NCBI RefSeq assembly: GCF_006345805.1
Contig: NW_021832865.1
Span: forward strand, 1-64,000
Source: Octopus sinensis
Taxonomy: Eukaryota
Direction of reading: 5' to 3'
Length of the DNA: 64,000 nt
The translations under genes and the position numbers were made by a program. Below are positions 12,795-57,416 of this stretch, piece after piece. Position 1 is the first letter of the stretch. Each line of letters opens with the position of its first letter. Under the pieces are notes generated by a model. That model ran no database searches and had not been told where the DNA came from. It saw only the letters and a program-made list of their open reading frames with translations.

Positions 12795-14455
12795 TTTCTA
12801 TAAGATTGATGTTTTCTGATTTTTCTGTTTTTGGTTAGTGCCCTGAAAGTTTTTCAATCTCTGCTCTGGTTCGCTATCTTTGTTATAAACAATTTAATTA
12901 AATATTTGAGGTGTCCTGTGTTGTGGTTTGTAAAAAGTGTTTCTGAATTATCGTGAGAGAAAATGTTATGTGTAAAGACAGCATGTTTTAGTGACATAAA
13001 CTTGTTTTTAGGTGATTTCTGTAGTGTTTATGAGGTGGTCAAGTCACAGAGTCAGTAGAGCACCAGATAGGTTGCTTTGTGGCAATCCTTCTGACTCTTT
13101 GCGATGCTCAAATCAATTTTGTCTTTGATCACTTTGGAGTCAATAAACAAAGTACTGGGGTCAATTCTTCTCAGCCTCTCACTTTTTCTTTCTGTTTCTC
13201 TCTCCCTCTTTTTAGAAGAAACCAGTTTTGGTCATTCTTGCAAAAGGATGGCCTTGACATCATCCTCATCATTGTTTAATGTCCTCTTTCCATGATGGCA
13301 TGGGTTGGATTGTTTGTATTGGAGCTGGCCAGGCTCCAGTTGTCTGTTGTGGCATGGTATCTACAGCTGGATGTCCTTCCTAATGTCAACCACTTAACAG
13401 AATGTGCTGGGTGATTTTTACATGCCACTGGCAAGGGTGTATTTTTATGTGGCACCCACCCATGAAAGGACAAGCCTGTATGTATGGAAGGCAGCGATTT
13501 TACTTAGCTTCACATGACTTTTCAAGTACAGCAAATCACCACATCCCCTGGTCCCTCCGGGTCTAAAATTACCCAAGACATGCCATTTCTGACCATAATG
13601 CCCCATACAACCCTATCAAGGAATTGAGGGCCCAACACAAAGCAGTATTTATAAATTAGGTTCACCTGGTTTAGTTTGGTGGGTGAATGGTTGGGGTGTT
13701 CTTTTGTTGAATGTATTCTATATGATGTTGTGGCATTAATCAGGCTTATCAGATTGGTACTTTTGGTTGTTATTGTTGTTGTGGTCATTGTCATTGTTTG
13801 GAAAATGTGGACAAAATGCTCAGTGACATTTCATCCAACTTTATGTTCTGGGTTCAAATTCCACTGAGGTCAATTTTACCTTTCATCTCCTCAGGGTCAA
13901 TAAAGTAAGTACCAGTTATACACTGGGGTTTATCTAATTGATTAACCTCTCCCCCAAAGTTTCAAGCCTTGTGCCTATTGAAGAAAGAATTGTTTGGAAA
14001 ATGTGTATTTAGGTGAAGTTAGTCATACTAAATGGCATCATTTGGTGGCATTTGTTTGGCTGTTTTATTGCAAAACATCTTTTTAAAGATTTTAAAGCTG
14101 AGAAGTGTGACTTTCAGATTTCATGGACATATGTTAGAACTCTGGTTTCTGTGAGTGAAATTAGCATTGTTCAATCAGGAATGCCATAACTTCTTTGCAG
14201 ATATTCTCAAGACAAAACGATTTTAGCAAATGTATTCGTCTATTTTAAAAATGGGAGAACTTTTGAAAAACTTTGGCTGTTATTTGTAGCATATCTGGAC
14301 TGTTTGAAGGCTATATGTATTTCAGGTTTACATCAGGCATGTAAAGTGGATGTTTATGATGTGGATAGCATTATATTGTTACATGGATGGTGAATAACTT
14401 GTATTTATCTAGCATTAAATCTTGGTTTTATTTTGCAGGAATATCTGCCACGAGT

Positions 14456-24250: not shown

Positions 24251-24756
24251 TATTATCAGTATCAATAACATTGATACGCTTAGTTTTGTTGGTTTTTGTA
24301 CGTATGTACGCGTGGCGTGTGTCACACTTACTGCAAAGAAGTGAGTGGTAAAGAGAGAGAGAGAATAAGAGAAAGAGAGAGAGAGTGAGAGAGAAAGAGA
24401 GAGAGAGAGTGAGAGGCAGTGATTGGTGTTTGTATTGTGTTTTTAATGTTGATACATACATACACACATTGTTAAATCAAAAGCAGGAGAGAGGAGGGAC
24501 ACAGAGGAAGTGAGAGAGAAAGAGAGAAAGTGATAGAAACAGTAGATACATAGATCCAAAGAAAAGTTGATACATAGACACGTAGTTAAATCAAAGCAAA
24601 TAACTGCAGCAAATATTGGATGTCACTTTCGCTATTCATTACCACACGAGGATAAAATTAACTCGCAAGTGGCTGAGTACTCCACAGTCATGCATATTAT
24701 TAACGTAGTTCTGGGGGCAATTCAGCCTCACACAGCTAGAACTCATTTTGGCCAGC

Positions 24757-24821
24757 GTGGTTAGTGGTTAGGATTCCTGGCTTTCACCCAGGCGGCCCGG
24801 GTTCGATTCCCGGCATGGGAA
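24757..24821 (+). pseudogene. tRNA-Glu(TTC) retrocopy lacking the 5' acceptor strand, fused to an RTE LINE
   Basis: Anticodon arm cctgg-ctTTCac-ccagg (TTC at 24783-24785), T arm ccggg-ttcgatt-cccgg and 3' acceptor strand catggga. The expected 5' strand tcccatg is absent and there is no CCA. Confidence 0.88.
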
Positions 24822-24829
24822 CGCATGTT

Positions 24830-26824
24830 TCATCTGGTGGTCAATGAGGAAACTAGGGATAGATGAATGGCTGGTGAGGGCTGTGCAAGCCATGTACAGA
24901 GATGCCGTAAGTAAGGTTAGAGTTGGCAGCATGTACACAGAAGAATTCAAGGTAGAGGTTGGGGTCCACCAGGGTTCAGTACTCAGCCCCCTCCTATTTA
25001 TCATAGTCCTCCAGGCAATTGTGGAGGAATTCAAGACAGGTTGCCCCTGGGAGCTCCTCTATGCTGACGACCTCGCTCTAATCGCTGAGTCACTATCAGA
25101 ACTGGAGGAGAAGTTCCAGGTGTGGAAGGAGGGTTTAGAATCGAGGGGCCTTAGAGTCAACCTAGCTAAAACCAAAGTACTAATAAGTAGAAAGTTAGAA
25201 AATCCACAAATATCCTCAGGAAGATGGCCCTGCTCGATCTGTGGAAAAGGTGTAGGTAGAAACTCTATAAGATGTACCCAGTGTAAGCTATGGACACATA
25301 AGAGGTGCAGCAATGTCAAAGGTAGGCTAACTGGGAAGATAGTTTTTGTATGTGGCAGATGCTCTGGAGCATTGACCTCCGAAAATCTGCAGAAAACAAC
25401 TTCCGTCACTTTCCGGGGGGAAAAACTAGAAGTAGTTGATAGCTTCCGCTATCTAGGTGACCAAGTCAGTAGTGGGGGTGGGTGCGCTGAAAGTGTAACT
25501 GCTAGAATAAGAATAGCCTGGGCAAAGTTTAGGGAGCTCTTACCTCTGCTGGTGACTAAAGGCCTCTCGCTCAGAGTAAAAGGCAGACTGTATGATGCAT
25601 GTGTACGAACAGCTATGCTACATGGCAGTGAAACATGGGCCGTGACTGCTGAGGACATGCGTAAGCTTGTGAGGAACGAAGCCAGTATGCTCCGATGGAT
25701 GTGTAATGTCAGTGTACTTACTCGACAGAGCGTTAGTACCTTGAGAGAAATGTTGTACCTAAGAAGCATCAGTTGTTGTGTGCAAGAGAGACGATTGCGC
25801 TGGTATGGTCATGTGGCGAGAATGGATGAAGATAGGTGTGTGAGAAAGTGCCAATCCCTAGCAGTTGAGGGAACCCGTGGAAGAGGTAGACCCAGGAAAA
25901 CCTGGGACGAGGTGGTGAAGCACGACCTTCGGACGTTAGGTCTCACCATGGAAATGACTAGAGACCGAGACCTATGGAAGTATGCTGTGCAAGACCCGGC
26001 AAGACTAGTGAAGCCATAACCCGTGGCCCCTACCTGGGACATAGTCAGTCCACCTGTGCATACCTTCCTTCTTGTGACACTTGTGAAGACCTGTTGAGGC
26101 AAGTGAGAATCGAATCGAATCAAATCAAATCAAATCGAACCAAATCAAAATAGATGAACATCAATGGAATTTGTATCCTTGTGGTACCAGTGCCGGTGGC
26201 ACATAAGAAAACCATCCGAACGTGATCGTAGCCAGTACCGCAACGACTGGCCTCCGTGCTGAGGGCACATAACAAACACCATCCGAGCGTGGCCGTCCGC
26301 CAGCCCCGTCTGGCACCTGTGTCGGTGACACATAAGAAAACACCATCCGAGCGTGGCCGTCAGCCAGCCTCGTCTGGCACCTGTGCCGGTGGCACATAAA
26401 AAACACCATCCGAGCGTGGCCGTCTGCCAGCCTCGTCTGGCACCTGTGTCGGTGGCACATAAAATCACCCACTACACTCTCGGAGTGGTTGGCGTTAGGA
26501 AGGGCATCCAGCTGTAGAAACACTGCCAGATCTGACTGGCCTGGTGCAGCCTTCGGGCTTGCCAGACCCCAGTTGAACCGTCCAACCCATGCTAGCATGG
26601 AAAGCGGACGTTAAACAATGATGATGATGATGATGATATAATATGTAAAAAGCACCCACTACACTCTCGGAGTGGTTGGCGTTAGGAAGGGCATCCAGCC
26701 GTAGAAACACTGCCAGATTTGACTGGGCCTGATGAAGCCTTCTGGCTTCACAGACCCCAGTAGAACTGTCCAACCCATGCAAGCATGGAAAACGGATGCT
26801 AAACGATGATGATGATGATGATGA
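24830..26824 (+). mobile_element. 5'-truncated RTE-clade LINE (copy A), open ORF 24844-26019, duplicated 3' tail
   Basis: RT motifs GVHQGSVLSPLLF and LYADD, a C4HC3 finger and RRLRWYGHV. The 3' UTR has ~63-bp repeats. (GAT)n tails occur at about 26620-26637 and 26807-26826. Confidence 0.95.
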
Positions 26825-27204
26825 TGAGTAAACTGGAGGAAGACAGACCTTCAAGTGATTGGAAGAAAACAAATAAAGATCTTATATAGGGGCAGGAAAA
26901 TCATTTTAATCTTTAGGATCAATATGGATGTTAATCCAATCATAACAGTGGCATTTGTGGGCCTCACAGATCAGGAGGCAAAGCCCCCAGATCACAGGCT
27001 GTTGTTATCAAACTGAGTGTGAGTCGAGGGTGAATACACGACGGAATAGCAATAATTTCGTCTCAGCTTTCATTGATAATGCTAAACACGACATTTTTGA
27101 CTTATGATATGGAGCATTTCCTTTTCTTTCACTCTTTTTAAAAAATGGCCCTCCATTAGTTATGATGATGAGGTTCCTGTTTATCTGATCAACGAAACAG
27201 TCTG

Positions 27205-27410
27205 CTCATAAAATTAACGTGCAAGTGGCTGAATACTCCACAGACATGCATACCATAAGTTAGTTCTCAGGGAGATTCAGCCTCACACAGAATGTTACAG
27301 GGATGGCCCCTTTGAATTACAGCGACAACTCACTTTTGCAAGCTGAGTACACTGCAGCAAAGTGAAGTAGAGTACCTTGCTCAAAAACACAGTGCACCGC
27401 AGGGAATCAT
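27205..27410 (+). mobile_element. Uninterrupted copy of the SINE-like repeat that is split at 24756/26825
   Basis: Shares ataaaattaac..gcaagtggctga.tactccacag...attcagcctcacacag...actca.tttt.c.agctgagta.actg.ag with 24650-24756 joined to 26825-26840. Confidence 0.7.
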
Positions 27411-28193
27411 TCTCATGACTTTATGATCATGGGCCGAATGCACCTAAGCACCTTCACTCTCTTAACCGTAGAGAAAAGGATTGAAGTGAGAGAGACAGAG
27501 AAAGGAAAGCCTCAGTCATTTAAAATGACAATTAGACTGGAATACGATCGATCTTTCCTTGCTTCTTTACTCTTAACAATGAAGAAGAGGGAAAGTCTTT
27601 CATTCTGGCAGTTCTAGAACAATCCACTGTTACTTCTCTCTTCTTTCCTCCCACCTCCAGTACTTATTCACCTCCTTTCATAGTTCTTCATGTCTTTTAG
27701 TTGGGGGGAAAGACCACGTTTTTATTTTCAGGCATGTTTAATGTTTTCTCCACAAACTACAATCAAGCCCCACTCTGTTCCTTTTCTTTTCATACAAAAA
27801 CTAATCCAAATTTCGAACAGGGTACAGCTGTAAAAAGAGCCCAGAAAAATGAGTAATACCCCTTACAAAATGGGTGGGGGAGAAAAGTTGCGAACAGGTG
27901 GCTACATGAAGTTCAACTCTATTCCTTAAAGAGTGTCTTCTACGAAAGAGTGTCTACTGACCAAAGCCTCATGAGTGAATTTGGTAGATGGAAACTGAAA
28001 GAAGCCCATCATATATATATTAATGGGGAAAGCTTGGTCTGCAATGTTTGCAGTCGTGTACGCTTGTCAAGAGCATGCCTCGTCACTCACCAATAGAGCC
28101 ACAAATGCAAAATATAAGTTAGTCCTAGAGCATACAATGTTACTGAAGGTCAGCAATGGTCTTCCTTGGTCACGAGTGGACGGCCATCATATA

Positions 28194-28318: not shown

Positions 28319-28770
28319 ATATTAATAGTTATCGCCAAGCTAATATGGTAGTCCATAAATATAAGACTAAAGTTGCCATTGATTAGCTCCAAGAGGCCAT
28401 CGCCTCTAGCTAGCTATATGACACACGAACCTGTGTCCATTATAACCTTCAAACAGAGGAGGTCAGCCGCTTCCCCTTGCTGGTCAGACATCTGCAGACA
28501 TGTTTCAGGGTATTTGCCCTTTATCAATGCAGAGTAGCCTGCTGGGTCTGGCTACTCTGCATTGATAAAGGGCAAATACCCTGAAACATGTCTGCAGATG
28601 TCTGACCAGCAAGGGGAAGCAGCTGACCTCCCCTGTTTGAAGGTTATAATGGACACAGGTTCGTGTGTCATATAGCTAGCTAGAGGCGATGGCCTCTTGG
28701 AGCTAATCAATGGCAGCTTTAGTCTTATATTTATGGACTACCATATTAGCTTGGCGATAACTATTAATAT
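28319..28770. repeat. 452-bp near-perfect palindrome (221-bp arms, 10-nt loop)
   Basis: Arms are 28319-28539 and 28550-28770, loop tgctgggtct. I count about three transition mismatches by eye. Confidence 0.95.
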
Positions 28771-29453
28771 ATATATATATTGGAAGGTTTGGAGATGATG
28801 TACAGGTATTATATATTAGAAGAAATGAGGTACTCAGAAAATTGGATGGTTTATATTTACAGATATTTATTTGTATATTACATGTTTTATACATCATATA
28901 ACTTAGATCATGTAATAGTGCTTTCTCCCATTCTAGTGGGGTTTTCAAATCAAACTAAGTTCCTGTGTGAGGAGTTTTGACCATTTTATAGTGGTATTGA
29001 GTTTGTAGTGGTGAGGAGGAATATAAGACAGTACAAGAGGGTGATGGATGAGGAGAAAGTGAGAGAGAGAACATGTGTGTATGTTAGTGTGTGTGTGTTT
29101 TTGTATTTGGGATGAGTGCTAAAGAAAAAGAGAGGAAGGGAGAGGGAAAAAGAAGAAAAGAATTTTTGGGGTCTGTTTTTGGGGAAAAAAGAATTTCAGT
29201 TTTGACCATTTCACAGTGTCACTGAGTGTGTGGTGGTGGGAAGGTAGACCATAAATTATATTTCTTTTTATCATTGTGAGAGAGTGTGTGTGTGTGTTTA
29301 ATGAGGGATGGTCAAATGTTTTTTGGGGTTTAGAGAAGAAGAATTCTTTTTATGATTGCTTTGTGGAAGTGTGTGTGTGTGTGCGTGTGTGTTTGTGGGT
29401 GTCTGTGAGTTTGGAGAAGGGAAGAGAAAAAATTGTGTTGATATTTATACCAC

Positions 29454-29503
<50 letters not shown>

Positions 29504-30044
29504 CACCATCATCATCGTTTAACGTCCGTTCTCCATGCTAGCATGGGCTGGACGGTTTGACCGGGGATCTGGGAAGCCAGAAGGCTGCACCAGGCTCCGG
29601 TCTTATCTGACAATGTTTCTACAACTGGATGCCCTTCCTAACACCAACCACTCTGTAAGTGTAGTGGGTGCTTTTTACGTGCCACCTGCACTGGTGCTAG
29701 GTGAGGCTGGCATCGGCCACGGTCGGATTGGTGCATTTTACGTGCCACCTGCACGGAAGCCAGTTGAGGCGGCACTGGCTTCGGCCACGATTCGGATGGT
29801 GCTTTTTACGTGCCACCGACACGGAAGCCAGTCGATGGCACGTAAAAAGCACCATCCGAATCGTGGCCGAAGCCAGAGGCTTATACATAAAAGATTAGAA
29901 AAAAACCACCTTTTATCAATTCAAAATGAACAATTAAATTACACCATCTAGAAAATTGCATATCAGAAAAGTTAAAATTAAAATTACAATTATAAAGTAA
30001 AGATTAAGTAAATTACAAAAATAATATAAAGTATATAACAGGTA

Positions 30045-30374
30045 ATATATATATACACACACACACATATATATATATACACACACACACACACATATAT
30101 ATATACACACACACATATATACACACACACACATATATATATACACACACACACATATATATATATACACACACACACACATATATATACATACACACAC
30201 ACATATATATATATACACACACACACATATATATACACACACACACATATATATACACACACACACATATATATATACACACACACACATATATACACAC
30301 ACACATATATACACACCACACACACATGTATATACACACACACACATATATATATACACACACACATATATACA

Positions 30375-30445
<71 letters not shown>

Positions 30446-30452
30446 CACACAC
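30045..30452. repeat. Compound (CA)n/(TA)n microsatellite
   Basis: Direct reading of the sequence. It lies in a ~560-bp insertion flanked by atcta on both sides. Confidence 0.95.
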
Positions 30453-30871
30453 AATACTAAATGTTCCACTATATTAAATTGTAAATTGAAAGATTTGTCC
30501 TTCAATCTATGATGAGTAAAATTTCATAAAGTCCATATTTGAAAAAGAGAGACTCTCCTGTATTGAGGTTACAAATGACAGAATACAAACGGACAACTAC
30601 TGAGTCTGTTCTTCAGCTGATTAAGTCTAATATCTCACTGATTGACAGTTAAATAAATATTAAGTTTTATCATGCAGGAGCAACTGGTTCCACAAATTCA
30701 AGTGAAATGGTTTCATTCAAATATTAGGATAGTCTTTGTTCAATGTTGTATTTTCAAAATCCAAAACATGTGTAGAACTCTGTGTGTGTGTGTATGTGTG
30801 TGTGTGTGTTTAATACAGTTTACTTAGAAAGTTTGGTCCTTCATCTGGTACAGCTTATTATAGAGATATTT

Positions 30872-31192
30872 TCAGCCATTTAATTTAGGGAAGAACTTAG
30901 CTATGAAATATTTTTCCATATTCCTCCTGAAAGAGGTGTTGTTCTTCGGACATTTGTAGAAGGGAAACATCTTAAATTTTCCTTCTCCACACGTAGCTAG
31001 GTGTGTACTTAGTAGTACCTTGCGTAGTTCTTCCTGCCGAACATGTTGTCGGTGAATCCTGGCTCGCTGGCACAAAGAATTACCAGTTTCACCTATGCAA
31101 TCCTCCTTGCACGTGGGGCAGATTATGCAGTATATAACGTTCTGTGTCTTGCAGTTCATATCTGCATTTACTTTAAATACGTCAATCAGCAT
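30872..31192 (-). CDS. Penelope-like GIY-YIG endonuclease fragment (CCHH-associated)
   Basis: NCKTQNVIYCIICPTCKEDCIGETGNSLCQRARIHR...STHLATC...NMEKYFIAKFFPKLNG: VIY/CIGET variant of GIY-YIG with a CxxC...H...H motif and terminal LN. Confidence 0.85.
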   Translation of the reverse strand: MLIDVFKVNADMNCKTQNVIYCIICPTCKEDCIGETGNSLCQRARIHRQHVRQEELRKVLLSTHLATCGEGKFKMFPFYKCPKNNTSFRRNMEKYFIAKFFPKLNG

Positions 31193-31719
31193 TTACTTTA
31201 ACTGTCAATCAGTGAGATATTAGACTAAATCAATTGAAGATCAGACAACAGACTCAGTAGTTGTCAATTTGTATTCTATCATTTGTAAATTCAACACAAG
31301 AAAGTCTCTTTTTCAAGTATGGACTGTATTAAACACACACACACACACACACACACAGTTCTACACATGCTTTGATTTTTGGAAAATACAACATTGAACA
31401 ACGGATATTCCAACATTTGAATGAAACCATTTCACTTTGATTAGTGGAACCAGTTGCTCCTGTAGGATAAAACTTAATATCTATTTAATCAGTGAGATTT
31501 AATCAGGATAAAACTTAATATCTATTTAATCAGTTGAAGATCAGACAACAGACTCAGTAGTTGTCCGTTTGTATTCTGTCATTTGTAACCTCAACACAGG
31601 AGAGTCTCTCTTTTTCAAATATGGACTTTATGAAATTTTACTCATCATAGATGGTGTAATTTAATTGTTCATTTTGAATCGATAAAAGGTGTTTTTTTTC
31701 TAATATTTTATGTATAAGC

Positions 31720-31753
<34 letters not shown>

Positions 31754-33410
31754 GTATAAATATCAACACAATTTTTCCCCTTCCTCCTTTTTTCTCTCTT
31801 CCCTTCTCCAAACTCAGACACCCACACAGACACACCTCCACAAAACGATCATAAAAAGTGGAAAGAATTCTTAAACCCAAAAAAGCATTTGACCATTAAA
31901 CACACACACACACACACTCACAATGATAAAAGGAAATATAATTTATAGCCTGCTTCACCGCCACCACACACTCAGTGACACTGTGAAGTGGTCAAAGCTG
32001 AAACTCTTTCTTTTTTTCCCAAGACCTTAGAACCCCCTTGGAGTCAATATTCTGTCCAGCAGACCAAAAAAATTCTTTTCTTCTTCCCTCTCCTTTCCTC
32101 TCTTTTACTTTAGCACTCATGGCAGATACAAAAACACACACACACACATGTTCTCTCTCTCACTTTCTCCTCATCCATCACCCTCTTGTACTGTCTTATA
32201 TTCCTCCCCACCACTACAAACTCAATACCACTATAAAATGGTCAAAACTCCTCACACAGGAACTTAGTTTGATTTGAAAACCCCACTAGAATGGGAGAAA
32301 GCACTAATACATGATCTAAGTTATATGATGTATAAAACATGTAATATACAAATAAATATCTGTAAATATAAACCATCCAATTTTCTGAGTACCTCATTTC
32401 TTCTAATATATAATACCTGTACATCATCTCCAAACCTTCCAATATATATATATATATGTGTGTGTGTGTGTATCATCATCATCATCATCGTTTAACGTCC
32501 ACTTTCCATGCTAGCATGGGTTGGACAATTTTGACTGAGGGCTGACGAACCAGATGGCTGCACCAGGCTCCAATCTTGATTTGGCAGAGTCTCTACAGCA
32601 GGATGCCCTTCCTAATGCCAACCACTACGAGAGTGTAGTGGGTGCTTTTTACGTGCCACCGGCACAGAAGCCAGTTGTCTGCTCTGGCAACGATCACGCT
32701 CGGATGGTGCTCTTGGCACCCTACCAGCACGAGGTTCAAGTGCCAGTAAGGCGACGCCGGTAATATATCACACTTGAATGGTTCCTTATATATATATATA
32801 TATGGACATATGTACATATGTATTTATATATATATGTCAGGTCACTTATGAGGTTCTCATAAGTGCTACTGGTAACATGGAATCCAGTAAAACATGTTGC
32901 ATGGTTGGGCTGTCGGCAACTAAACTGGCACACCCACCAGAATATCCTGGTGAGGACGGTTGCTAGAAACCCAGCAACATTACAAACAAGACCTGCTGAA
33001 AAGTCGGATGAACCTAATGCAATAGACCACGTATGCAGAATTTCTGGGATGGTGTCTGGCGTGCTGACAAACCACTGGGAGTGAGGTGCCCCTCAGCTTC
33101 TATTGAAGCATGTCTCTAGAAGAAGGTCACTTTGATATGAAACCAGATATGCAGGGAACGGCATTGGACATTTTGAGGATATTTGGTTTGTGCTAGAGAT
33201 CATTGCATTCCCACATCCCTAGCCTGTGGTGCATATTGGGATCAGACATATTGCTCCAGCTTGTCTCTGGATAATGTCAATAAAATGGAGAGGGTCTATG
33301 AGGTGTCGTGCAAGCCTTATTAGACCTACAGCTCTGGACAGGCATTGCTGACCTCTGTTCGATGTGTGCTGATTTTTTCCCCCAATATCTATGTGTATAT
33401 ATATATATAT

Positions 33411-36400
33411 ATCATCATCATCATCATCATCGTTTAACGTCCGCTTTCCGCGCTAGCACGGGTTGGACGGTTCGACCGGGTCTGGGAAGCCAGGGGCCGC
33501 TCCAGGCTCCAGTCTGAATCTGGCAGAGTTTCTACGGCTGGATGCCCTTCCTAACGCCAACCACTCCGTGAGTGGATTGGGTGCTTTTTACGTGCCACCT
33601 GCACAGGGGCCGGAGGGTCCGGCATCGTCACGATCGGTTCGAGCATTTTAACGTGTCAGCGGCACGGGGGCAACGAGGTCCGGGGTACTTTGGGGATCGG
33701 GGTACTTTGGGGATCCAGGGTACTTTGGGGATCCGGGGTACTTAGAATGGGTAGGGGGTATGTGGAATTGCTGCAGAAAGCAGCCCGGGTCTTTGTAGTC
33801 ACAGCATATCTCCAGAGATCTCGGTCCTTCGCCATTGCCTCAGTGAGGCCCAATGCTCTGAGGTCATGCTTGACCACCTCATCCCATGTCTTCCTGGGTC
33901 TACCTCTCCCCCTGATACCTTCAACTGTTTGGGAGTGGCACTTCTTCACACATCTCTCTTCATCCATCCGCAGCACATGACCATACCATCGCAAGCGTCG
34001 CTCTTGCACACCACATCTGATGCTTCTTATATCCAGCATTTCTCTCAGGATACTTACACTCTGTTTTGCGTGCACACTGACACTACACATCCAGCGGATC
34101 ATGCTAGCTTCATTTCTTTCAAGTCTACGCATGTCTTCTGCAGTCACAGCCCATGTTTCATTACCGTGAAGCATGGCAGTTCGCACACATGCATCATACA
34201 ATCTACCTTTTGCTCTGAGGAAGAGACCTTTTGTTGCCAGTAGGGGTAGGAGCTTTCTGAACTTTGCCCAGGCTATTCGTATTCTAGTGGTGATACTCTC
34301 TGTGCATCCACCTCCGCTACTAACTTGGTCTCCCAGGTAGCGGAAACTATCAACTACTTCTAGTTTCTCTCCCTGGAGTGTGATGGAATCTGTTTTCTGA
34401 GTGTCTGTTGTGTCTATTGTCCCTGTGCATCTGCCGCACATGAAAGCTATCTTATCTGTTAATTTCCCTTTAATGTTGCTGCACCTCTTATGTGTCCATA
34501 ACTTACATTGGGTGCATCTTATGGAGTTTCTACTGTACCTTTCCTACAGGTTGAGCAGGGCCACCTACCCGAGGGGATGTGTGCTGAGTACCTCTTGCTG
34601 CTTACTAATACTTTGGTCTTTGCTACATTTATTCTAAGGCCCTTTGATTCCAACCCTTGCTTCCACACCCGAAATTTCTCTTCTAGTTCCGGTAGTGATT
34701 CTGCTATGAGAGCTAGGTCATCGGCATAGAGGAGCTCCCAGGGGCATCCCGTTTTGAATTCCTCTGTTATTGCCTGAAGGACTATGATGAATAAAAGGGG
34801 ACTGAGGGCTGAGCCCTGGTGCACACCTACTTCTACCCGGAATTCTTCACTATATTCGTTGCCAATCCTAACCTTGCTGACAGCCTCTCTGTATAGAGCC
34901 TGTACAGCCCTTATTAGCCATTCTTCAATCTCCAGTTTCCGCATCGACCACCAGATAAGGGAATGGGGAACCCTGTCAAAGGCTTTCTCCAAGTCTACAA
35001 AAGCTATGTAGAGGGGTTTATCTTTAGCTAGGTACTTCTCCTGCAGTTGTCGGACCAGGAATATAGCATCAGTGGTGCTTCTACCTGGTACAAAACCGAA
35101 CTGCATTTCATCTAAACAAATTCTCTCCCTAATGAGATTGGTTATGACCTTCTCTGAGACCTTCATCACCTGGTCCAACAGTTTGATACCTCTGTAGTTA
35201 TTTCTATCTAGAGCATCACCCTTACCCTTGTAGCAGTTGACTATGGTGCTGCTGCACCAGTCATTGGGTATGACTCCATTGTGAACTACCTGGTTTACAA
35301 TGCGGGTGACTATGGCATAGCCCACATAGCCAGCTGTTTTAAGCATCTCAGCAGTGATTCCTGATAGGCCAGGGGCTTTGCCTGGTTTCATATCCTTAAT
35401 TGCCTTATCTACAAGGGAGCTATCTATTCGGGTAGCTGGTCCCTCTACTGGGTCAACATTTGGCAGGCTCTCCTCCTCCCATTCATTCTCCTCATTCAGC
35501 AGTCTTTCATAATGGCTTCTCCAAGCCTCTTTCTTTTCACTAGTAGTAAAAGCAAGTGCCCCATCATCCATGCGGACACATTTCTCTCCTATAACATCGC
35601 TATTTTCTCTGACACACTGTCTGGCAATCCGAAATACTTCAGCTCTTTGATCCTCGCGACGCTGGACATTGGCAAACTTCTTCTTTTCTGCTACATCTTT
35701 GGCAATGTATACCAGCCGCCCAGCCTCCCTTTTGGCTATCCGGTACAGTTCCCTGCTGCCCCCATCCTTCCAGGCTTTCCAGGCCCGTCTCTTTTCACAG
35801 ATGGCTTTATCTACTGCACTATTCCACCACCACGTAATTCTAGGTCTGGAAGGGACTTTGCACCATCCACAGACTTGGTCTGTGGCACTCAACAAGCTGT
35901 CCCGTAGGAATTCCCAGCTACCTTCTATGTCTGACGTCTGAAGCTCCTCCTCCCTCTCATCAAATTTCTTGATGAGTATGTCCCTAAATTTCTGACCATG
36001 CGAAGGGTTCTTTAGCCTCCAAATCCTTCTTTTCTGGATTGGTTTGTTTCTTGGAGTCCTTCTGGCCTCAAGCTTAAAGTCACTGATGATTAGTCTATGC
36101 TGAGGGATACATTCTTCACCGGGAGGGTCTTTGTATTCAAGAGCAACCCTGCATCCCGTTGTCTGGTGAGGATGAAGTCTATTTGGCTAGCGGAGTCTCC
36201 TGACTGATAAGTTATAAGGTGGCAGACTGGCTTCTTGAAGTTAGTGTTGCAGATTGAAAGGTTACATGCATCACAGAATTCCAGCAGTCTAGTTCCCTCA
36301 TCATTTCTGGTGCCAATACCATAGCCACCATGTACCCCAGTGAAGATACCCGATTCCCGCCCAACATGCCCATTAAAATCTCCACCTACAAAGATGAGGT

Positions 36401-37746
36401 CCTTGTTACTAGTCTTTGAAGTAGCCTGCAGAAGGGTATCATAAAAGTTGTCCTTCTGATCATTTGGTAGTCCCGCTTGTGGGGCATAGGCTGAGATAAT
36501 CATAGCTGTGCCACTCTGTAGGACCAACCTGAGCTTAAGCACTCTATCACAAACCCTGACAACCTCTATGACCTTATCCACCCATTCCTCCGCAAGGAGA
36601 ATGCCTACACCCCCTACACCTTCCGCGTTACCTTGCCAGTAGAGTTTGTACCTAAGTGCCTTGCCCGTGAGGACCCTAGCCGAAGCATCTCTCCATCTTA
36701 CCTCTTGTATGCAGCATACATCAACCTGTCTTCTCTCTAGCATCTCTACAATCTCACTAGACTTGCCTGTCAATGTACCAACATTGATAGTGCCAACTCT
36801 GAAAACTGGGAAGGAGATGTGGGGGGGGGGACGGGGGGGATTCGGCGCCTGAGAAGAGGAGGGTTGTTGTGGTGGTGATAGTTTTCGTGGTATTTTTCTT
36901 TTGATCTCTCTTCCAACCTGACCACGCCGTGGGCAGGAGCTGGTGTTAGCAGTGGACATTCGTTATCGTCACTGAGTAATGTAATTAGGTAGAGGAAAGA
37001 AATACAGATATTCTAGAGTTGAGTTGGGGAGGGGGGGGTCCAGTTGAGGCGGGTAATATAGGGGAGCAACCAGTGGGGAAGGTTGGGGTAAGGAGGAACG
37101 ATGGCAGGAAGGGTTGGTGTAGGTTCGTAAGAAATAAAAACGTAGGATATTACGAGGTGGGAGGGTACTAAAAGGGATGGTCGGATTGAGGCAGTGTCAG
37201 GAGGAAGCGTAAGATCGGTGGGCAGTTGATGAGCTATGGCGCTAGCAGCTTGTCTTTTCACAGTGAAAGCATATGAGGAGAAGGGGTAGTGGGGGGAGGA
37301 GGAGGGAGTAGGGCGTATCCGGTGTAGATGAGTAGGGCGTATCCGGTGTAGATGGTGAGAACAGGGTATACTGGTATTGGTGGTGGGGGTGAGAACAGTG
37401 TTCACCGGTATTGGTGGTGGCGGTGAGAACAGTGTTCACCGGTATTGGTGGTGGGGGTGAGAACAGTGTTCATCGGTATTGGTGGTGGTGGTGGTGGGGG
37501 GGGGGCACCGCCAATGGCGGAAAGATGGGAAAAGACGGATTACGGCTTGAGGTAGCCTAAGGTTAAATTTCGTAGAGAGAGAGATAGGAAAGATAAATCA
37601 AGTTATGGCGAAGGCTTGAAAGTAGCCTAAAAGGTTAAATTTTCGTAGTGAGTGAGATGGGTAAGACGAATCAAGTTATCAATGTATGAATAAACGTAGT
37701 AACAACGAATAAAAATAGTAAGATAAATTTTTAAGAACTTGCTGCG
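33411..37746 (-). mobile_element. Near full-length RTE-clade LINE (copy B): APE endonuclease + RT + PHD-like finger
   Basis: ORF pieces 36959-36090, 35895-34519 and 34441-33656 join into about 1100 aa by adding one G near 36121 and one near 34532; I checked by hand that both gap regions are then open. (GAT)n tail at 33411. The 5' region has 34-bp and 24-bp tandem repeats. (TA)n lies on both flanks. The 5' boundary is inferred. Confidence 0.93.
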
Positions 37747-38199: not shown

Positions 38200-39597
38200 A
38201 AATTGAATGCTGGATCAGGAACAAACCCAACAGAAGGGGATTCTGACAATGAATGAGAGCCAAATGGAATGAGATAGGACTCTTCGAAACAAGTGAGCAA
38301 TTGTTAGCCGACCAGGCAAGAGCAATTAGAGCAAAAAGGTGGTTAACGGACATGGAAATTGAAGAGATAAAAAGAAAAGTAGAAAGGAGAAATAATCCTT
38401 CACCAACAGATAACGTGCCCAGTGAGAACAGAGAAAGAAATAACGGCAGTGAAGATGTAGAACAAAGTGTAAATGTAAATGCATTCTCCACAAATTAAGC
38501 AGAAGTAATAGGAAGAGCTGTATCACAAGAATACGGTGATGACCAACAAGATGTAGAGAGGATATATTTGAGAAGACCAGGATCAAGACCCTTCCCTCCA
38601 TAATCTGAGGTACATTGACCAATGCAAGATCAAGGTTGAAACCATAAAGATAAATTCAGTTCTTGGGCTGTTCCATACGAGAAATATCACTGAAACTCAC
38701 AAGATTATTTGGGGTGCAGCAACTGTTGCTGCAGATAGACTTGGATAGAAAAGGAAAGAACAAACAGAACGTAAAGAACCGTTCTGGTGTAGAGGAATTT
38801 GTAAGGAACAAAGTCATTTAGGACAAGTTGATAGATTGAGAAGAGGGGAATTGCAGAATGAAAGTATAAGAATGATGCTGGAAAGGACAGATGGAATAAG
38901 AGATAAATTGTATGATGAGATATTGGAAGAAATGAAACAAAGAATTGGAGCAATCAAAGCAAAACAGGAAAGATAGAAGAAAATAATTCAAGCAGAACAG
39001 ATTGTTAGAAGCATATGAGAAGTAACTGTTTCAGGAACTGGATGGGCAATTACACATAACAATGATACCAGAAGCAGAGGAAAGTAGGGCATTCTGGAGA
39101 GGGATCTGGGACCAATCTGCAGATGATAATAATGAAGCAGAGTGGCTGCATGAAATCCAAGATAGGTTAAGAAATATAGAAGGCAAAAAAGACATAAAAA
39201 TAACTACAGAAATGATAAAAAAGCAGTTAAGAAAATTCCCAAATGGAAGAGCCAGGACTGGATGGGGTCCCAGATTATTGGATGAAGAAGCTGAGAGGGA
39301 TCCATCAAAGGAGAGTGCAACAGCTAGATGAGTGCTCGCAGGAAGGTGCAGTACCCAGCTGGAAGACAAAGGGAAAGACATTGTTATGTGCCAAGGATCC
39401 TGGAAAGGGAAATGTTGCATCCAACTTTAGAACAATAACATGCTTTCTGCTCACGTGGAAACTAATGTCAGGTAATTTGGCTGCTGAACTGTACAGATGC
39501 TTGGGAAAAAGTGGGCTGCTACCCATTAAACAGAACGGGTACAGTAAAAGGAGCCAGGAAACAAAGGATCAGCTCTTGATTGCTAATCTAATTACCA
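38200..39597 (+). mobile_element. Degraded R4/Dong-clade non-LTR retrotransposon (5' half, up to the start of RT)
   Basis: [61 protein letters not shown] and TKDQLLI, with many stops and frameshifts. Confidence 0.75.
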
Positions 39598-39601
39598 ATT
39601 A

Positions 39602-40740: not shown

Positions 40741-40859
40741 CTTGTATTTATTATAATTAATAGAGATAGTGTTTACTTAGTATGTGTTAAATGTTGGTTA
40801 TATTTTTCTGTTTGCTAATGTATTATACTAATAACATATTAGTATGCTCCTTCACCATC

Positions 40860-43800
40860 CCTACCCCTAGTTTCGACCTAGGTAAGGTAATGATCATACA
40901 GTGCAAAATATGAATGGGTAGTGTTATGCAGGTTGAATTGAAGGCTACTGTATTACTTGCTCATGAATTCTGCCAAATGTGAGCTTTCTTTTCAGGTACA
41001 TGAAGCTACTGTCCACCGACGCAGGGTCTCTAGGGCCCATACTTCCCACACCCTCAGGGTTGGCACCCTCAACGTTGGCACACTGAAAGGTAGGTCTGGC
41101 GAGATAGTTGAGATGCTTGAACGGAGGTGTGTGGATATATGTTGCATGCAAGAAGTAAGGTGGAGAGGAGGTTCTGCTAGGTTCCTCACAGGCAAGGAAC
41201 ACAGGAAAAGATTTTCTGGGCAGGGAACACTGACGGGGTTGGAGGCGTGGGTATACTTATTGCTGAGAAATGGGTAGATAAAGTAATTGAGGTAATCAGA
41301 GTATGCGACAGAATACTTAAGATTAGATTAGCGCTTCATCATAGTTTAGCAACCATTATATCAGCCTATGCTCCTCAGTCGGGGTTACCTGATGGACAGA
41401 AAGGCCGATTCTATGACACTCTACTGCAGACTACCTCGTTGACGAACGACAGAGACCTTCTCTTTGTGGCTGGTGACTTCAATGGTCACGTTGGACGACA
41501 TGCTGGGGGCTTCCATGGCGTACATGGAGGCTATGGCTCTGGTTCCCGCAACGAGGAGGGAACCAGGCTGCTGGAGTTCTGCGATGCAAATAATCTTATG
41601 ATTTGTAACACTAACTTCAGGAAACCTACCAGCCACCTAGTCACCTACCGATCGGGCCAACATACCAGCCAAATTGACTACATCCTTGCCAGGCAAAGGG
41701 AGAGATGGCTACTTATAAATGCCAAAACCTTCCCAGGCGAAGAATGTACCCCACAACATAGACTGGTAGTTAGTGACTTTAGGATCAGGAGTAGGAGGAC
41801 AACCAGAAGACGACCAACATGGAGAAGAAGGATCTGGAAGCTTAAGGATCCTGCGAATGGACAGAGATTTAGAGACATGTTACTTGAAGCCTTTGACGAA
41901 GTAGAAGGGGATAGAGTATCACATGGGGTAGAGGGCAACTGGACGTTTCTAAGGGACAACCTGCTGAGAGCCACAGACCAGATCTGTGGCTGGTGCAAAG
42001 TCCCCTCTCGTCCCAAGGTAACGTGGTGGTGGAACAGTGTTGTAGACAGGGCTATTAGAGAAAAGAGACAGACTTGGAAGCACTGGAAGAATGGGGGTAG
42101 CAGGGAATTGTATCAGACTGCAAAAAGGGAAGCTAGGAGACAGGTCTATCTAGCCAGAGGGGAAGCAGATAAGAAAAAATTTGCCAATGTTCTGCGCCGT
42201 GAGGACCAAAGACTGGAGGTGTTTCGCGTTGCAAGACAGTATGTGAGAGAGAATTGTGATGTGGTAGGAGAGAAGTGTGTTCGCATGGAAGATGGTTCAC
42301 TTGCGCTAAACGAGAATGCAAAGAGAGAGGCTTGGAGACGCCACTATGAAAGGTTACTGAATAAAGAAAATGAATGGGATAAAGAGAGTCTGCTGAACGT
42401 TGACCCAACAGAGGGACCAGCTATCAGGGTTGATAGTTCCATGGTAGCTAAGGCAATTAGAAGCATGAAGACAGGGAAAGCCCCAGCCCATCAGGTATCA
42501 CTGCAGAGATGCTCAAAATATCTGGTAGCGTCGGCTATAGCCTAGTCACCTGTATAGTTAATCAGGTGATACATGAAGGAGTCATACCCAATGACTGGTG
42601 TAGCAGCATAATAGTCAACTGCTACAAAGGTAAAGGTGATGCCCTAGATACAAATAATTACAGAGGTATCAAGCTGTTGGATCAGGTGATGAAGGTTACA
42701 GAGAGGGTCATAAGCCAACTAATTAGAGAGAGAGTTAGTTTAGATGAGATGCAGTTTGGTTCGTGCCAGGGAAAAGTACCACTGATGCTATATTCCTGGT
42801 AAGGCAGCTGCAGGAGAAATACCTAGCCAAAGATAAGCCCCTGTACCTGGCTTTTGTTGACATGGAGAAAGCCTTCGACAGGGTCCCCCGATCCCTCATC
42901 TGGTGGTCAATGAGGAAACTAGGAATAGATGAATGGTTAGTGAGAGCTGTGCAAGCCATGTACAGGGATGCTGCTAGTAAGGTGAGGGTTGGCAATGAGT
43001 ACAGTGAAGAATTCCGGGTAGAGGTAGGGGTCCATCAAGGTTCAGTCCTCAGCCCCCTCCTATTTATCATAGTCCTCCAGGCAATAACGGAGGAATTCAA
43101 GACAGGATGCCCCTGGGAGCTCCTCTATGCTGATGACCTTGCTCTAATTGCTGAGTCATTATCAGAACTGGAGAAGAAGTTTCAGGTGTGGAAGCATGGT
43201 TTAGAATCGAAGGGCCTTAGAGTCAACCTAGCTAAAACCAAAGTCGTAATAAGTAGGAAGGTAGACAAATCACAAACGCCTTCAGGTAGATGGCTCTGCT
43301 CGATCTGTAGAAAAGGTGTAGGTAGAACTCTATAAGATGCACCAAGTGTAAGCTATGGACACATAAGAGGTGCAGCAATGTCATAGGAAGGCTAACTAGG
43401 AAGATGGTTTTTGTATGTGGCAGATGCTCGGGAGCATTAACCTCTGAAAATCTGCAGAAAACAACTTCCGTCACTTTCCAGGGGGAAAAATTAGAAGTAG
43501 TTGATAGCTTCCGTTATCTTGGTGACCAAGTCAGTAGTGGGGGTGGGTGTGCTGAAAGTGTAACGGCTAGAGTAAGAATAGCCTGAGCAAAGTTTAGGGA
43601 GCTCTTACCTCTGTTGGTGACTAAAGGCCTCTCGCTCAGAGTAAAAGGCAGACTGTATGATGCATGTGTACGAACAGCCATGCTACATGGCAGTGAAACA
43701 TGGGCCGTGACTGCTGAGGACATGCGTAAGCTCGCGAGAAATGAAGCTAGTATGCTCCGTTGGATGTGTAATGTCAGTGTTCATAGTCGACAGAGTGTAA

Positions 43801-44788
43801 GTACCTTGAGAGAAAAGTTGGACCTAAGAGGCATCAGATGTTGTGTGCAAGAGAGACGATTGCGCTGGTATGGTCATGTGGCGAGATTGGATGAAGATAG
43901 GTGTGTGAAAAAGTGCCACACCCTGGCAGTTGAGGGGACCTGTGGAAGAGGTAGACCCAGGAAAACCTGGGTCGAGGTGGTGAAGCACGACCTTCGAACT
44001 CTAGGTCTCACCAAGGAAATGACCAGAGACCGAGACCTATGGAAGTATGCTGTGCGTCAGAAGACCCGGCAAGACCAGTGAGAACAATAAAAATCAAATC
44101 ATATATCAGAAAGCAGGGGTTAAGTGACCCATCTGTTCGTGTCCACTGTCAGCCTCGTCTGGCACCCGTGTCGGTGATACGTAAAAGCACCATTCGCTCG
44201 TGGCCGTTTGCCAGCTCTGTCTGGCCCCCGTGTCGGTGGCACGTAAAAGCACCATCCGTTCGTGTTCGTTGCCAGCCTCGCCTGGCCCTGTGCCGGTGAC
44301 ATGTAAAAGCACCGTCCGTTCGTGGCCGTTTGCCAGCTCTGTCTGGCCCCGTGTCGGTGGCACGTAAAAGCACCATCCGTTCGTGTTCGTTGCCAGCCTC
44401 AGCTGGCCCCCGTGCCGGTGACACGTAAAAGCACCGTCCGTTCATGGCCATTTGCCAGCTCTGTCTGGCCCCGTGTCGGTGGCATGTAAAAGCACCATCC
44501 GTTCGTGTCCGTTGCCAGCATTGCCTGGCCCCGTGCCGGTGACACGTAAAAACACCATCCGTTCGTGGCCGTTCGCCAGCTCTGTCTGGCACCTGTGCAG
44601 GTGGCACGTAAAAAACACCCACTACACTCGCGGAGTGGTTGGCGTTAGGAAGGGCATCCAGCCGTAGAAACACTGCCAAATCTGACTGGGCCTGATGAAG
44701 CCCTCCGGCTTCACAGACCCCAGTTAAACCGTCCAACCCATGCTAGCATGGAAAACGGACGCTAAATGATGATGATGATGATGATGAT
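40860..44788 (+). mobile_element. Near full-length RTE-clade LINE (copy C), disrupted
   Basis: APE (RVGTLNVGTL, AYAPQ, GDFNGHVG, SQIDYIL), RT and C4HC3 finger. Four -1 frameshifts (about 41209, 42484, 42760, 43327) and one TGG>TGA at 43584-43586. The 3' UTR has eight ~61-bp repeats and a (GAT)n tail. The 5' boundary is approximate. Confidence 0.93.
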
Positions 44789-44898
44789 ATTACTTTGTCT
44801 TCAAATAATTTCCTGTATTTACCCACTGAACTCCCCAGCTCACCCCTAATCCCTCACCAACGAAATGATTTTATCTTTTTACTTTTTCATAATTTTAG

Positions 44899-57197: not shown

Positions 57198-57416
57198 CAG
57201 TGCTTTTCAAACTTTTTGCTGGAGCAGAACCCCAAGGAAACATTCCACTGGCTCGAGGAACCCCTGTGCAATAATTTAATAGTCTTATGCACACATATCT
57301 GCACAAGAGACTTAAAAATTACTGCCAATTTTAGCAGTTTTGTAACTTTTTGCGGAACCCCTGGACTGTACTGGTGGAACCCTAAGGATCCGTGGAACCC
57401 TGGTTGAAAACCACTG
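57198..57416. mobile_element. hAT (Charlie-like) MITE, 219 bp
   Basis: TIRs cagtgcttttcaaac / ggttgaaaaccactg and a perfect 8-bp TSD acctacat at 57190-57197 and 57417-57424. Confidence 0.92.

What the first reader, a model, noticed from the sequence alone, without database searches (positions are those of the whole stretch)
24757..26824. tRNA-Glu / RTE-LINE chimeric retrocopy, possibly primed on a pre-tRNA
Seen in sequence: a tRNA-Glu(TTC) missing only its 5' acceptor strand is followed by acgcatgttt and then joins directly to a 5'-truncated RTE at catctggtgg (the full copy reads ccctcatctggtgg near 42895). The cassette splits an older repeat: the left flank actcattttggccagc and right flank tgagtaaactggag rejoin to match the intact copy at 27328-27358. 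There is no CCA; the short trailer ends in TTT. Established: U6/L1-type chimeras arise by template switching, and tRNA-head/LINE-tail fusions are the accepted origin of SINEs. Inference: the RT jumped onto the oligo-U 3' end of an unprocessed Pol III transcript, so this is a proto-SINE birth event that still has an open 391-aa RT C-terminal ORF.
Basis: partly seen in the sequence, partly recalled or inferred. Interest (0 to 1): 0.8.

Follow-up and report, generated by a model that had tools for sequence, protein, structure and literature searches.

The report
Pre-tRNA-Glu fused to truncated RTE retrocopy
An octopus genome carries a young 2,068-bp retrotransposed insert, absent from the same site in Octopus vulgaris, in which a nearly complete, unprocessed tRNA-Glu copy is fused head-to-tail to a 5'-truncated RTE LINE: a clean single-locus example of how SINE-like chimeras form, but not a working SINE.

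Summary
Window 24757-24821 is positions 7-73 of an animal nuclear tRNA-Glu(TTC). It has no CCA. A 9-nt trailer, CGCATGTTT, follows, and it joins with 0-1 nt of overlap to an RTE LINE truncated inside its RT domain (24831 onward; 91% identical to the long copy from 42896).

New evidence: the orthologous Octopus vulgaris site (OX597814.1) reads GGCCAGC|TGAGT with nothing in between. The whole block 24757-24824 is therefore a precise, lineage-specific insertion with no target-site duplication.

The best explanation is an RNA-level chimera integrated by RTE target-primed reverse transcription. Most likely the RT jumped from the broken 5' end of an RTE RNA onto the 3' end of a pre-tRNA-Glu whose 3' trailer had not been removed. 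Ligation of the two RNAs, or read-through from an unseen source locus, cannot be excluded.

- The cassette carries two RTE 3' tails of different subfamilies. That means a second jump, a nested insertion or a 3' transduction.
- The D arm lacks one base.
- The 391-aa ORF lacks the first catalytic Asp, so it cannot encode an active RT.
- A T5 run at 25343 would stop Pol III long before the tail.

"Proto-SINE birth" is therefore an analogy, not a demonstrated property. This is a new member of a known kind, of moderate interest.

The parts
24652..24756 (+). Left half of the older interspersed repeat that was the target; it ends ...AACTCATTTTGGCCAGC.
   Evidence: 84.5% identical to the paralogous copy at 27208-27290. 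Continuous with the right flank both in the paralog and in O. vulgaris L065 ~430-551.
24757..24821 (+). tRNA-Glu(TTC)-derived segment, positions 7-73 including discriminator A. Anticodon loop 24781-24787. B box GGTTCGATTCC at 24800-24810 is intact. The A-box region TGGTTAGTGG at 24758-24767 lacks one base.
   Evidence: ARAGORN; Rfam RF00005 at 32.7 bits; 63/66 columns identical to real tRNA-Glu genes, with 1 gap.
24822..24830 (+). 3' trailer CGCATGTTT with no CCA. The last T is shared with the RTE sequence (cccTCATCTGG), giving 0-1 nt of junction overlap.
   Evidence: Direct reading. Real tRNA-Glu genes show 0-7 nt followed by T4-T11.
24831..26637 (+). 5'-truncated RTE LINE. ORF 24844-26019 (391 aa: C-terminal half of the RT plus a PHD-like zinc finger). 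(AATCA)n at 26108-26149. 63-bp tandem repeats at ~26182-26464. 3' tail 1 at 26461-26619 plus (GAT)6 at 26620-26637.
   Evidence: 91.3% to 42896-44081 and 82% to 44348-44790. Pfam RVT_1 profile positions 101-193 of 205 only, PHD at E=2e-4. TRF. Tail alignment.
25343..25347 (+). TTTTT, the only T>=4 run on the sense strand of the insert; a Pol III terminator signal upstream of the RTE tail.
   Evidence: The same T5 is present in the long copy at ~43409.
26638..26642 (+). ATAAT spacer between the two RTE tails.
   Evidence: Most other tails in the window are likewise followed by AT-rich sequence or (TA)n.
26643..26824 (+). Second RTE 3' end (tail 2). It starts at ATGTAAAAAGCACCC and ends in (GAT)n GA. 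It belongs to a different subfamily from tail 1.
   Evidence: Tail 2 is 92.9% identical to the long copy's tail and 90.3% to tail 1. It shares the diagnostic blocks GATGAAG and TTCACAG with the long copy, where tail 1 has GGTGCAG and TTGCCAG.
26825..26841 (+). Right half of the split target, TGAGTAAACTGGAGGAA. Its TGA continues the GAT periodicity of the tail (3-nt microhomology). No target-site duplication.
40950..44790 (+). Long RTE copy used as the comparator. It has an APE-type endonuclease plus RT in broken frames, 61-bp tandem repeats at 44129-44613, and a tail ending in (GAT)n. It reads through the junction point at 42893-42906.

Best explanation

Proposed sequence of events:
1. The RTE reverse transcriptase primed on the nicked target, where the TGA of ...CCAGC|TGAGT pairs with the (GAU)n tail.
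2. It copied RTE RNA until the template ended inside the RT coding region, at CAUCUGGUGG.
3. It then continued on the 3' end of a nascent or partly processed pre-tRNA-Glu(UUC) that still carried its Pol III trailer (CGCAUG plus U's) and had no CCA.
4. It copied that RNA to position 7. The cDNA was then joined to the upstream target end with no duplication or loss of target bases.

Shown: the anatomy, the precise lineage-specific insertion, and the precursor nature of the tRNA partner. Inferred: that the join was a template jump, and that it happened in one event.

The second RTE tail of another subfamily at the 3' end means one of three things, which I cannot separate: (a) an earlier jump in the same event, giving a tripartite chimera; (b) a short RTE tail fragment already at the site, with the chimera landing at its AT-rich 5' edge; or (c) a 3' transduction from the source locus.

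The product is a dead copy. It has no endonuclease and no RT motif A, its tRNA promoter region is damaged, and an internal T5 lies before the tail.
For: - tRNA identity and extent.
- No CCA, and a 6-nt spacer plus T run typical of real tRNA-Glu gene trailers.
- Seamless sense-to-sense junction at the 3' end of the small RNA and a 5'-truncated LINE.
- Other RTE copies (36802-33785 on the minus strand, 63261-63954 on the plus strand, and the long copy) read straight through the junction point, so it is not a family boundary.
- Orthologous O. vulgaris site empty and exact, with unique flank 26825-28020 at 96.9% identity. The paralogous repeat copy gives the same join.
- RTE was active in this lineage. 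A second RTE (33413-37746, minus strand) is also absent from O. vulgaris and sits inside a (TA)n tract.
- A Pol III read-through origin is disfavoured by the T5 at 25343, which is also present in the long copy.
- Literature. Non-LTR RTs jump end-to-end onto the 3' ends of acceptor RNAs after adding mainly non-templated A (PMC8857657). Bipartite and tripartite LINE chimeras are documented (PMC2104539). tRNA/L1 chimeras are reported (bioRxiv 10.1101/2025.02.02.635956). SINE heads acquired by template switching are proposed (PMC5729268). RTE plus tRNA composites occur among SINEs (PMC5786205). RTE is active in octopus (PMC9115989, PMC13282606).
Against: - With no target-site duplication, one event cannot be proven from the site alone. 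The empty site shows only that everything between 24757 and 24824 is lineage-specific.
- I could not search the source genome. A source locus (a tRNA-Glu gene followed directly by this RTE fragment), or further copies with the same junction, may exist.
- No real tRNA-Glu gene with the trailer CGCATGTTTT was found, but the only comparators available came from other animals.
- The three Ts could be RT-added rather than templated.
- For the best-studied case, U6/L1, experiments favour RNA ligation before reverse transcription (PMC6789731).
- No read-level validation of the assembly was possible.
Confidence: 0.6

Rival explanations
1. Read-through or 5' transduction from a source locus. A 5'-truncated RTE happened to insert into the T-run terminator of a tRNA-Glu gene. 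A transcript starting at or near the tRNA ran into the RTE and was retrotransposed via the RTE tail.
For: It would reproduce the same junction. Splitting the T run to TTT would weaken the terminator. The near-complete tRNA at the 5' end fits a Pol III start. With hundreds of thousands of RTE insertions and hundreds of tRNA genes, such a locus is not impossible (my estimate, not computed).
Against: A Pol III transcript would meet T5 at 25343, about 1.5 kb before the tail. That T5 is ancestral to the family. A Pol II read-through would put the 5' end within 6 nt of the tRNA start only by coincidence. No such locus appears in the 105 kb available.
Confidence: 0.15
2. RNA-RNA ligation before reverse transcription, as shown for U6/L1. 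A tRNA-ligase-type enzyme (RtcB) joined the 3' end of the pre-tRNA to a cleaved RTE RNA carrying a 5'-OH. The chimeric RNA was then copied in one pass.
For: PMC6789731 shows that U6/L1 chimeric RNAs form independently of retrotransposition. The junction here is clean, with 0-1 nt of overlap. RtcB acts naturally on tRNA precursors.
Against: RtcB needs a 2',3'-cyclic phosphate or a 3'-phosphate. A Pol III-terminated pre-tRNA ends in UUU-OH, and U6 gets its cyclic phosphate from a dedicated enzyme. Sequence alone cannot separate this model from a template jump.
Confidence: 0.12
3. Separate events or DNA-level capture. An RTE insertion and a tRNA(-gene) fragment arrived independently at the same spot, for example as filler DNA during 5'-end repair or as an independent tRNA retropseudogene.
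For: There is no target-site duplication to tie the parts together. The 3' end of the cassette may itself record two events (two tails).
Against: The tRNA piece ends where a Pol III transcript would end, not at a random DNA breakpoint. Its orientation and position (small-RNA 3' end against LINE 5' end) are those expected for cDNA continuation. A pre-tRNA has no RTE tail with which to integrate on its own. No target bases were lost.
Confidence: 0.06
4. One reading: this copy is a nascent SINE able to be transcribed by Pol III and mobilised by RTE.
For: The B box is intact and the A box is nearly intact. The RTE tail with its conserved predicted hairpins is present twice. The copy is young.
Against: It is 2,068 bp long. 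T5 lies about 590 nt in, so Pol III products would lack the tail. The first 6 nt of the tRNA and one A-box base are missing. It is the only copy in the sequence I could search.
Confidence: 0.04
5. Assembly artefact: a chimeric read or a mis-join created the tRNA/RTE junction.
For: The locus is dense with repeats. The young long RTE copy has several frame breaks that could be long-read indel errors.
Against: Both outer boundaries are exact to the base against an independent species assembly. A mis-join would not give a clean insertion with contiguous flanks.
Confidence: 0.03

Closest known systems
LINE-mediated chimeric retrocopies (U6/L1, 5S/L1 and tRNA/L1 in mammals; WEIRD/MGL bi- and tripartite chimeras in Magnaporthe)
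   Same: A small Pol III RNA copy is fused, in sense, by its 3' end to a variably 5'-truncated LINE that keeps its 3' tail. The whole is inserted as one block at a new site. A possible double jump here parallels the tripartite chimeras (PMC2104539; bioRxiv 10.1101/2025.02.02.635956; PMC6789731).
   Different: The LINE is an RTE-type element of a cephalopod, not L1 or MGL. There is no target-site duplication. The tRNA is nearly full length, in sense, and carries its 3' trailer, whereas the 21 reported tRNA/L1 chimeras are mostly tRNA halves in antisense orientation.
tRNA-headed SINEs mobilised by RTE (SINE2/tRNA-RTE types such as SINE2_Gav, CoeSINE4, SINE2-1_EC with a tRNA-Glu head; Ceph-SINEs)
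   Same: A tRNA head is followed by RTE-derived sequence and the RTE 3' tail (PMC5786205).
   Different: Those are short (about 160-610 bp in the tables read) multi-copy families, and their RTE parts come from the UTRs. This is a single 2,068-bp copy joined inside the RT coding region, with a Pol III stop before the tail.
PittSINE/TguSINE1 model of SINE head acquisition by template switching
   Same: The same proposed step: a LINE RT switches from a LINE-tailed RNA onto a tRNA during TPRT (PMC5729268).
   Different: That model is inferred from an amplified family long after the event. Here the primary product is seen with its empty orthologous site, but without amplification.
Octopus RTE elements (RTE-2_OV and relatives)
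   Same: Single-ORF endonuclease plus RT plus zinc-finger architecture, a microsatellite-rich 3' UTR and evidence of recent activity in Octopus (PMC9115989, PMC13282606).
   Different: I did not compare against the RTE-2_OV sequence, so subfamily identity is unknown.

Membership tests
LINE-mediated chimeric retrocopy (template-switch type) | Copies of two unrelated transcripts are fused directly, in the same orientation | tested here: met
   tRNA-Glu 24757-24821 plus trailer, joined to the RTE at 24831, both on the + strand, with 0-1 nt of overlap.
LINE-mediated chimeric retrocopy (template-switch type) | The 3' partner is a 5'-truncated LINE that keeps its own 3' end | tested here: met
   The RTE is truncated inside the RT domain, and the tail ends in (GAT)n.
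LINE-mediated chimeric retrocopy (template-switch type) | The 5' partner ends at the 3' terminus of its RNA at the fusion point | tested here: met
   Full 3' acceptor strand, discriminator, and a trailer ending in a T run. Trailers of real genes are 0-7 nt plus T4 or longer.
LINE-mediated chimeric retrocopy (template-switch type) | The whole was inserted as a unit (target-site duplication or empty site) | tested here: inconclusive
   An exact empty site in O. vulgaris shows the block is lineage-specific. There is no target-site duplication, and the two tails leave one event versus two events open.
LINE-mediated chimeric retrocopy (template-switch type) | No contiguous genomic source locus has the same junction | not testable with these tools
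   The source genome is not searchable here. There is none in the window, L065 or L066.
tRNA-derived SINE (SINE2, RTE-mobilised) | tRNA-related head with usable A and B boxes | tested here: inconclusive
   The B box is intact (24800-24810). The A-box region has a 1-nt deletion, and positions 1-6 are missing.
tRNA-derived SINE (SINE2, RTE-mobilised) | A short non-coding element whose Pol III transcript reaches the LINE-derived tail | tested here: not met
   The block is 2,068 bp, and T5 at 25343-25347 lies before the tail.
tRNA-derived SINE (SINE2, RTE-mobilised) | An amplified family of copies | tested here: inconclusive
   There is one copy in the window and none in 41 kb of O. vulgaris. A genome-wide count was not possible.
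RTE clade of non-LTR retrotransposons | A single ORF with an APE-type endonuclease followed by an RT, with no ORF1 | tested here: met
   In the long copy, Exo_endo_phos_2 then RVT_1 lie within about 3.1 kb of coding space.
RTE clade of non-LTR retrotransposons | A 3' end with a short-repeat tail and a conserved 3' UTR shared with short non-autonomous copies | tested here: met
   A ~160-nt tail plus (GAT)n is shared by 11 copies in the window, with predicted hairpins and few compensatory changes.
RTE clade of non-LTR retrotransposons | Phylogenetic placement of the RT within the RTE clade | not tested
   Only name-level support: the nearest named proteins are unclassified Octopus RT proteins, and the architecture matches the published RTE-2_OV.
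Functional nuclear tRNA-Glu gene | A complete cloverleaf with a 5' acceptor strand, conserved at the orthologous locus | tested here: not met
   Positions 1-6 are absent and the D stem lacks one base. The piece is absent from the O. vulgaris ortholog.

The most novel reading that the evidence does not exclude
The cassette is a tripartite product of two consecutive end-to-end template jumps by an octopus RTE reverse transcriptase: from an RTE tail fragment onto the 3' end of a second RTE RNA, then onto the 3' end of a nascent pre-tRNA-Glu. It would show at base resolution that SINE heads are captured from 3'-unprocessed Pol III precursors. A genome-wide survey would then find a class of such pre-tRNA/RTE chimeras, some of which seeded the very abundant and largely unclassified octopus SINEs.
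Probability: 0.2. Interest if true: 0.7.

Novelty: new member of a known kind. Interest (0 to 1): 0.45.

Why it matters
SINE heads are widely thought to be acquired when a LINE reverse transcriptase switches onto a small Pol III RNA. That step is usually inferred from old, amplified families. Here the primary product is preserved with its empty orthologous site, and the tRNA partner still carries a 3' trailer and no CCA. This points to a nuclear precursor, not a mature tRNA, as the captured RNA. It also extends sense-oriented, near-full-length tRNA/LINE chimeras from mammalian L1 to an RTE element in a mollusc with very high SINE and LINE content. The value is as a documented example and as a search template (tRNA 3' end + trailer + LINE interior) for genome-wide surveys. 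This single copy has no demonstrable function.

Tried and rejected
- Exact look-up of the 391-aa ORF in public assemblies found nothing on record. The nearest protein clusters are 85% or less identical. The junction could therefore not be checked in other assemblies. A protein search cannot see it anyway, because a TAG at 24769 precedes the ORF.
- A search for other tRNA heads on the roughly ten other RTE tails in the window, using Rfam at E<=10, found none.
- A metagenome scan with the tRNA 3' half gave 75 real tRNA-Glu genes, useful as comparators. None has the trailer CGCATGTTT. All are from other organisms, so this says nothing about the octopus source gene.
- A Pfam scan of other long ORFs, looking for a host-gene anchor near the site, found nothing. 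The anchor came instead from ORF 44865-45590, which led to O. vulgaris P0121.
- Locus L066 (O. vulgaris P0076) is a paralogous RTE copy and not syntenic. The table mixed L065 and L066 coordinates because both sit in one file. One search is the corrected table.
- I considered the open ORF as a sign of selection and rejected it. A copy younger than the ~3% species divergence is expected to stay open about as often as not (my rough estimate, not computed).
- I considered a precise deletion in O. vulgaris in place of an insertion here and rejected it. The paralogous repeat copy shows the same uninterrupted join, and there is no target-site duplication to mediate excision.
- The third protein-database search was not spent on species identification or on an O. 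bimaculoides ortholog. The expected information gain was low.
Full report
**What is there**

The window is octopus DNA. The best named protein matches of its RT ORF are from Octopus bimaculoides (85%) and O. vulgaris (79%). A 20-kb O. vulgaris segment is collinear with it.

ARAGORN finds one tRNA in the 64 kb, tRNA-Glu(ttc) at 24752-24820. Rfam's tRNA model gives its only hit there, at 32.7 bits against a gathering score of 29, and finds no other tRNA even at E<=10.

[quoted passage not shown] This recovered 75 animal-type tRNA-Glu(TTC) genes. Against these, 24757-24821 is positions 7-73 with 63 of 66 columns identical. The two substitutions lie at positions that vary among real genes. The third difference is a 1-nt deletion in the D stem (GGTCTAG becomes GGT-TAG). 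The first six bases (TCCCAT) are absent.

After the discriminator A there is no CCA. Instead CGCATGTTT follows (24822-24830), and then CATCTGGTGG..., which is the interior of an RTE-type LINE. Homology to the long copy in the same window runs 24830-26011 = 42896-44081 at 91.3%. Three other RTE copies read straight through that point, so it is a truncation and not a family boundary.

**The LINE part**

The long copy (about 40950-44790) has an APE-type endonuclease and an RT in one, now broken, reading frame. It has 61-bp tandem repeats in the 3' UTR and a tail of about 160 nt ending in (GAT)n. This architecture matches the published octopus RTE-2_OV.

In the chimera the ORF 24844-26019 is open for 391 codons. 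It covers only RVT_1 profile positions 101-193 of 205, plus a PHD-like finger. The junction falls just after FVDMEKAFDRVPRSL in the long copy. The first catalytic Asp and the whole endonuclease are therefore missing, and the ORF cannot encode a working RT.

**The insertion is real, precise and young**

It scores best with the right flank starting at 26825.

Stronger evidence came from the ORF at 44865-45590. It hit one O. vulgaris protein, whose locus L065 (GCA_951406725.2, OX597814.1:216482287-216502694) is collinear with the window. There the site reads ...AATTCATTTTGGCCAGC|TGAGTGAACTGGAGCAAGACAGACC..., with nothing between the two halves.

The block 24757-24824 (2,068 bp) is therefore absent from O. 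vulgaris. It has no target-site duplication and no target bases were lost. The TGA at the right edge continues the GAT periodicity of the tail, which is microhomology for priming.

The unique flank 26825-28020 is 96.9% identical between the two genomes. With the rate used in PMC13282606 (JC 0.09 for about 25 My), that is a split of roughly 4 My. This estimate is my inference and is rough. The insertion is younger than that split.

In the one related species I could reach, the orthologous locus carries neither the tRNA piece nor the LINE.

The cassette ends in two RTE 3' ends: tail 1 (26461-26637) and tail 2 (26643-26824), separated by ATAAT. They are 90.3% identical to each other. Tail 2 shares diagnostic blocks with the long copy's tail (92.9%), while tail 1 groups with other copies. 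The two tails therefore come from different source elements.

Three readings fit:
- An earlier template jump in the same event, from the 5' end of a short RTE RNA onto the 3' end of a second RTE RNA. This would be a tripartite chimera like those in PMC2104539.
- A short tail fragment inserted first, with the chimera landing at its AT-rich 5' edge. RTE tails in this window are usually followed by AT or (TA)n, and a second lineage-specific RTE sits inside a (TA)n tract.
- A read-through from the source locus (3' transduction).

O. vulgaris lacks both tails, so it does not decide between them.

**Mechanism**

The tRNA partner was a precursor. It has no CCA, and it has a 6-nt spacer plus a T run. 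The real genes have 0-7 nt before T4-T11.

The geometry is the one expected when cDNA synthesis continues from the end of a broken LINE RNA onto the 3' end of another RNA: small-RNA 3' end against LINE 5' end, same strand, 0-1 nt overlap. Non-LTR RTs do this end-to-end after adding mostly non-templated A, which would pair with terminal U (PMC8857657). By the same token, some of the three Ts may be RT-added rather than templated. The 6-nt non-tRNA spacer is the firmer evidence for a precursor.

Rival models:
- Pol III read-through from a source locus. This is disfavoured because the only T>=4 run in the sense strand, T5 at 25343-25347, lies about 1.5 kb before the tail and is ancestral to the family.
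- Pol II read-through. This would place the 5' end within 6 nt of the tRNA start only by chance.
- RNA ligation before reverse transcription, as shown for U6/L1. This needs a cyclic-phosphate end that a Pol III-terminated pre-tRNA does not normally have (PMC6789731). Sequence alone cannot exclude it.

I put about 0.85 on 'an RNA-level chimera integrated by RTE machinery' and about 0.6 on the template jump specifically.

**Is it a proto-SINE?**

Only by analogy. The B box is intact. The A-box region lacks a base, positions 1-6 are gone, the block is 2 kb long, and Pol III would stop at T5 without reaching the tail. The junction is unique in the window and absent from the 41 kb of O. vulgaris sequence fetched. 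A genome-wide count was not possible with these tools.

The tail itself is conserved across 11 copies and has predicted hairpins. One of these is CCATG-CTAG-CATGG, with a single compensatory change. That is weak evidence that the tail is the RT recognition element. Both tails keep it.

**Comparison with what is known**

This belongs with LINE-mediated chimeric retrocopies. It differs from the 21 tRNA/L1 chimeras recently reported, which are mostly antisense tRNA halves, in being sense-oriented, nearly full length and trailer-bearing, and in involving an RTE element of a cephalopod. tRNA + RTE composites are common among established SINEs, including one with a tRNA-Glu head (PMC5786205). Head capture by template switching has been proposed for bird SINEs (PMC5729268). 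I file it as a new member of a known kind.

**Limits**

There were no reads, no access to the source genome or to other octopus genomes by DNA search, and only one outgroup site.

Noticed in passing
window 33413-37746 (- strand): A second RTE copy is absent from the collinear O. vulgaris segment (L065 7915/7920). Its (ATC)n tail abuts a (TA)n microsatellite that is uninterrupted in O. vulgaris. RTE therefore inserted at least twice within 10 kb in this lineage. About 940 bp at its 5' end (36803-37746) has no match to the long copy.
   Followed up: partly
window ~40746-45387: The 3.84-kb long RTE copy, plus 590 bp that includes the first 172 codons of ORF 44865-45590, has no counterpart in O. 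vulgaris (breakpoint about L065 10005). Whether this is an insertion here or a deletion in O. vulgaris is unresolved. The RTE has several frame breaks despite being apparently young.
   Followed up: partly
window 58047-61071: A tandem array of 69 bp (23 codons) in 44 copies, with 96% matches, is open on both strands (ORFs of 616 and 506 aa). Window 56050-61407 has no counterpart in the O. vulgaris segment.
   Followed up: partly
window 39596-40740: A 115-bp tandem array has 10 copies here and about 2 at the orthologous O. vulgaris position.
   Followed up: partly
window 28767-32455: A large inverted repeat: 28767-29482 against 32455-31723 (84.5%), with inner arms 30505-30819 against 31652-31323. 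O. vulgaris L065 6019-6431 matches both outer arms.
   Followed up: no
window 24700-24735 vs L065 481-530: The older target repeat differs between the species by a 32-bp segment present in O. vulgaris and in the paralogous copy but missing in the window, and by 17 bp present only in the window.
   Followed up: no
window 12005-12838: ORFs with a Helitron-like look (cysteine-rich CQFCRAKLWPGE motif). There was no Pfam hit, and the attribution rests on memory only.
   Followed up: no
L065 10724-20408 (O. vulgaris); window >46 kb: The neighbouring O. vulgaris gene encodes a 1,759-aa Macro-domain protein. The right third of the window probably carries its exons.
   Followed up: no
L065 12652-12990: O. 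vulgaris has an RTE 3' end that is 95.9% identical to the tandem-repeat plus tail-1 region of the chimera (26291-26631). The subfamily that supplied the chimera's RTE part therefore predates the species split.
   Followed up: no
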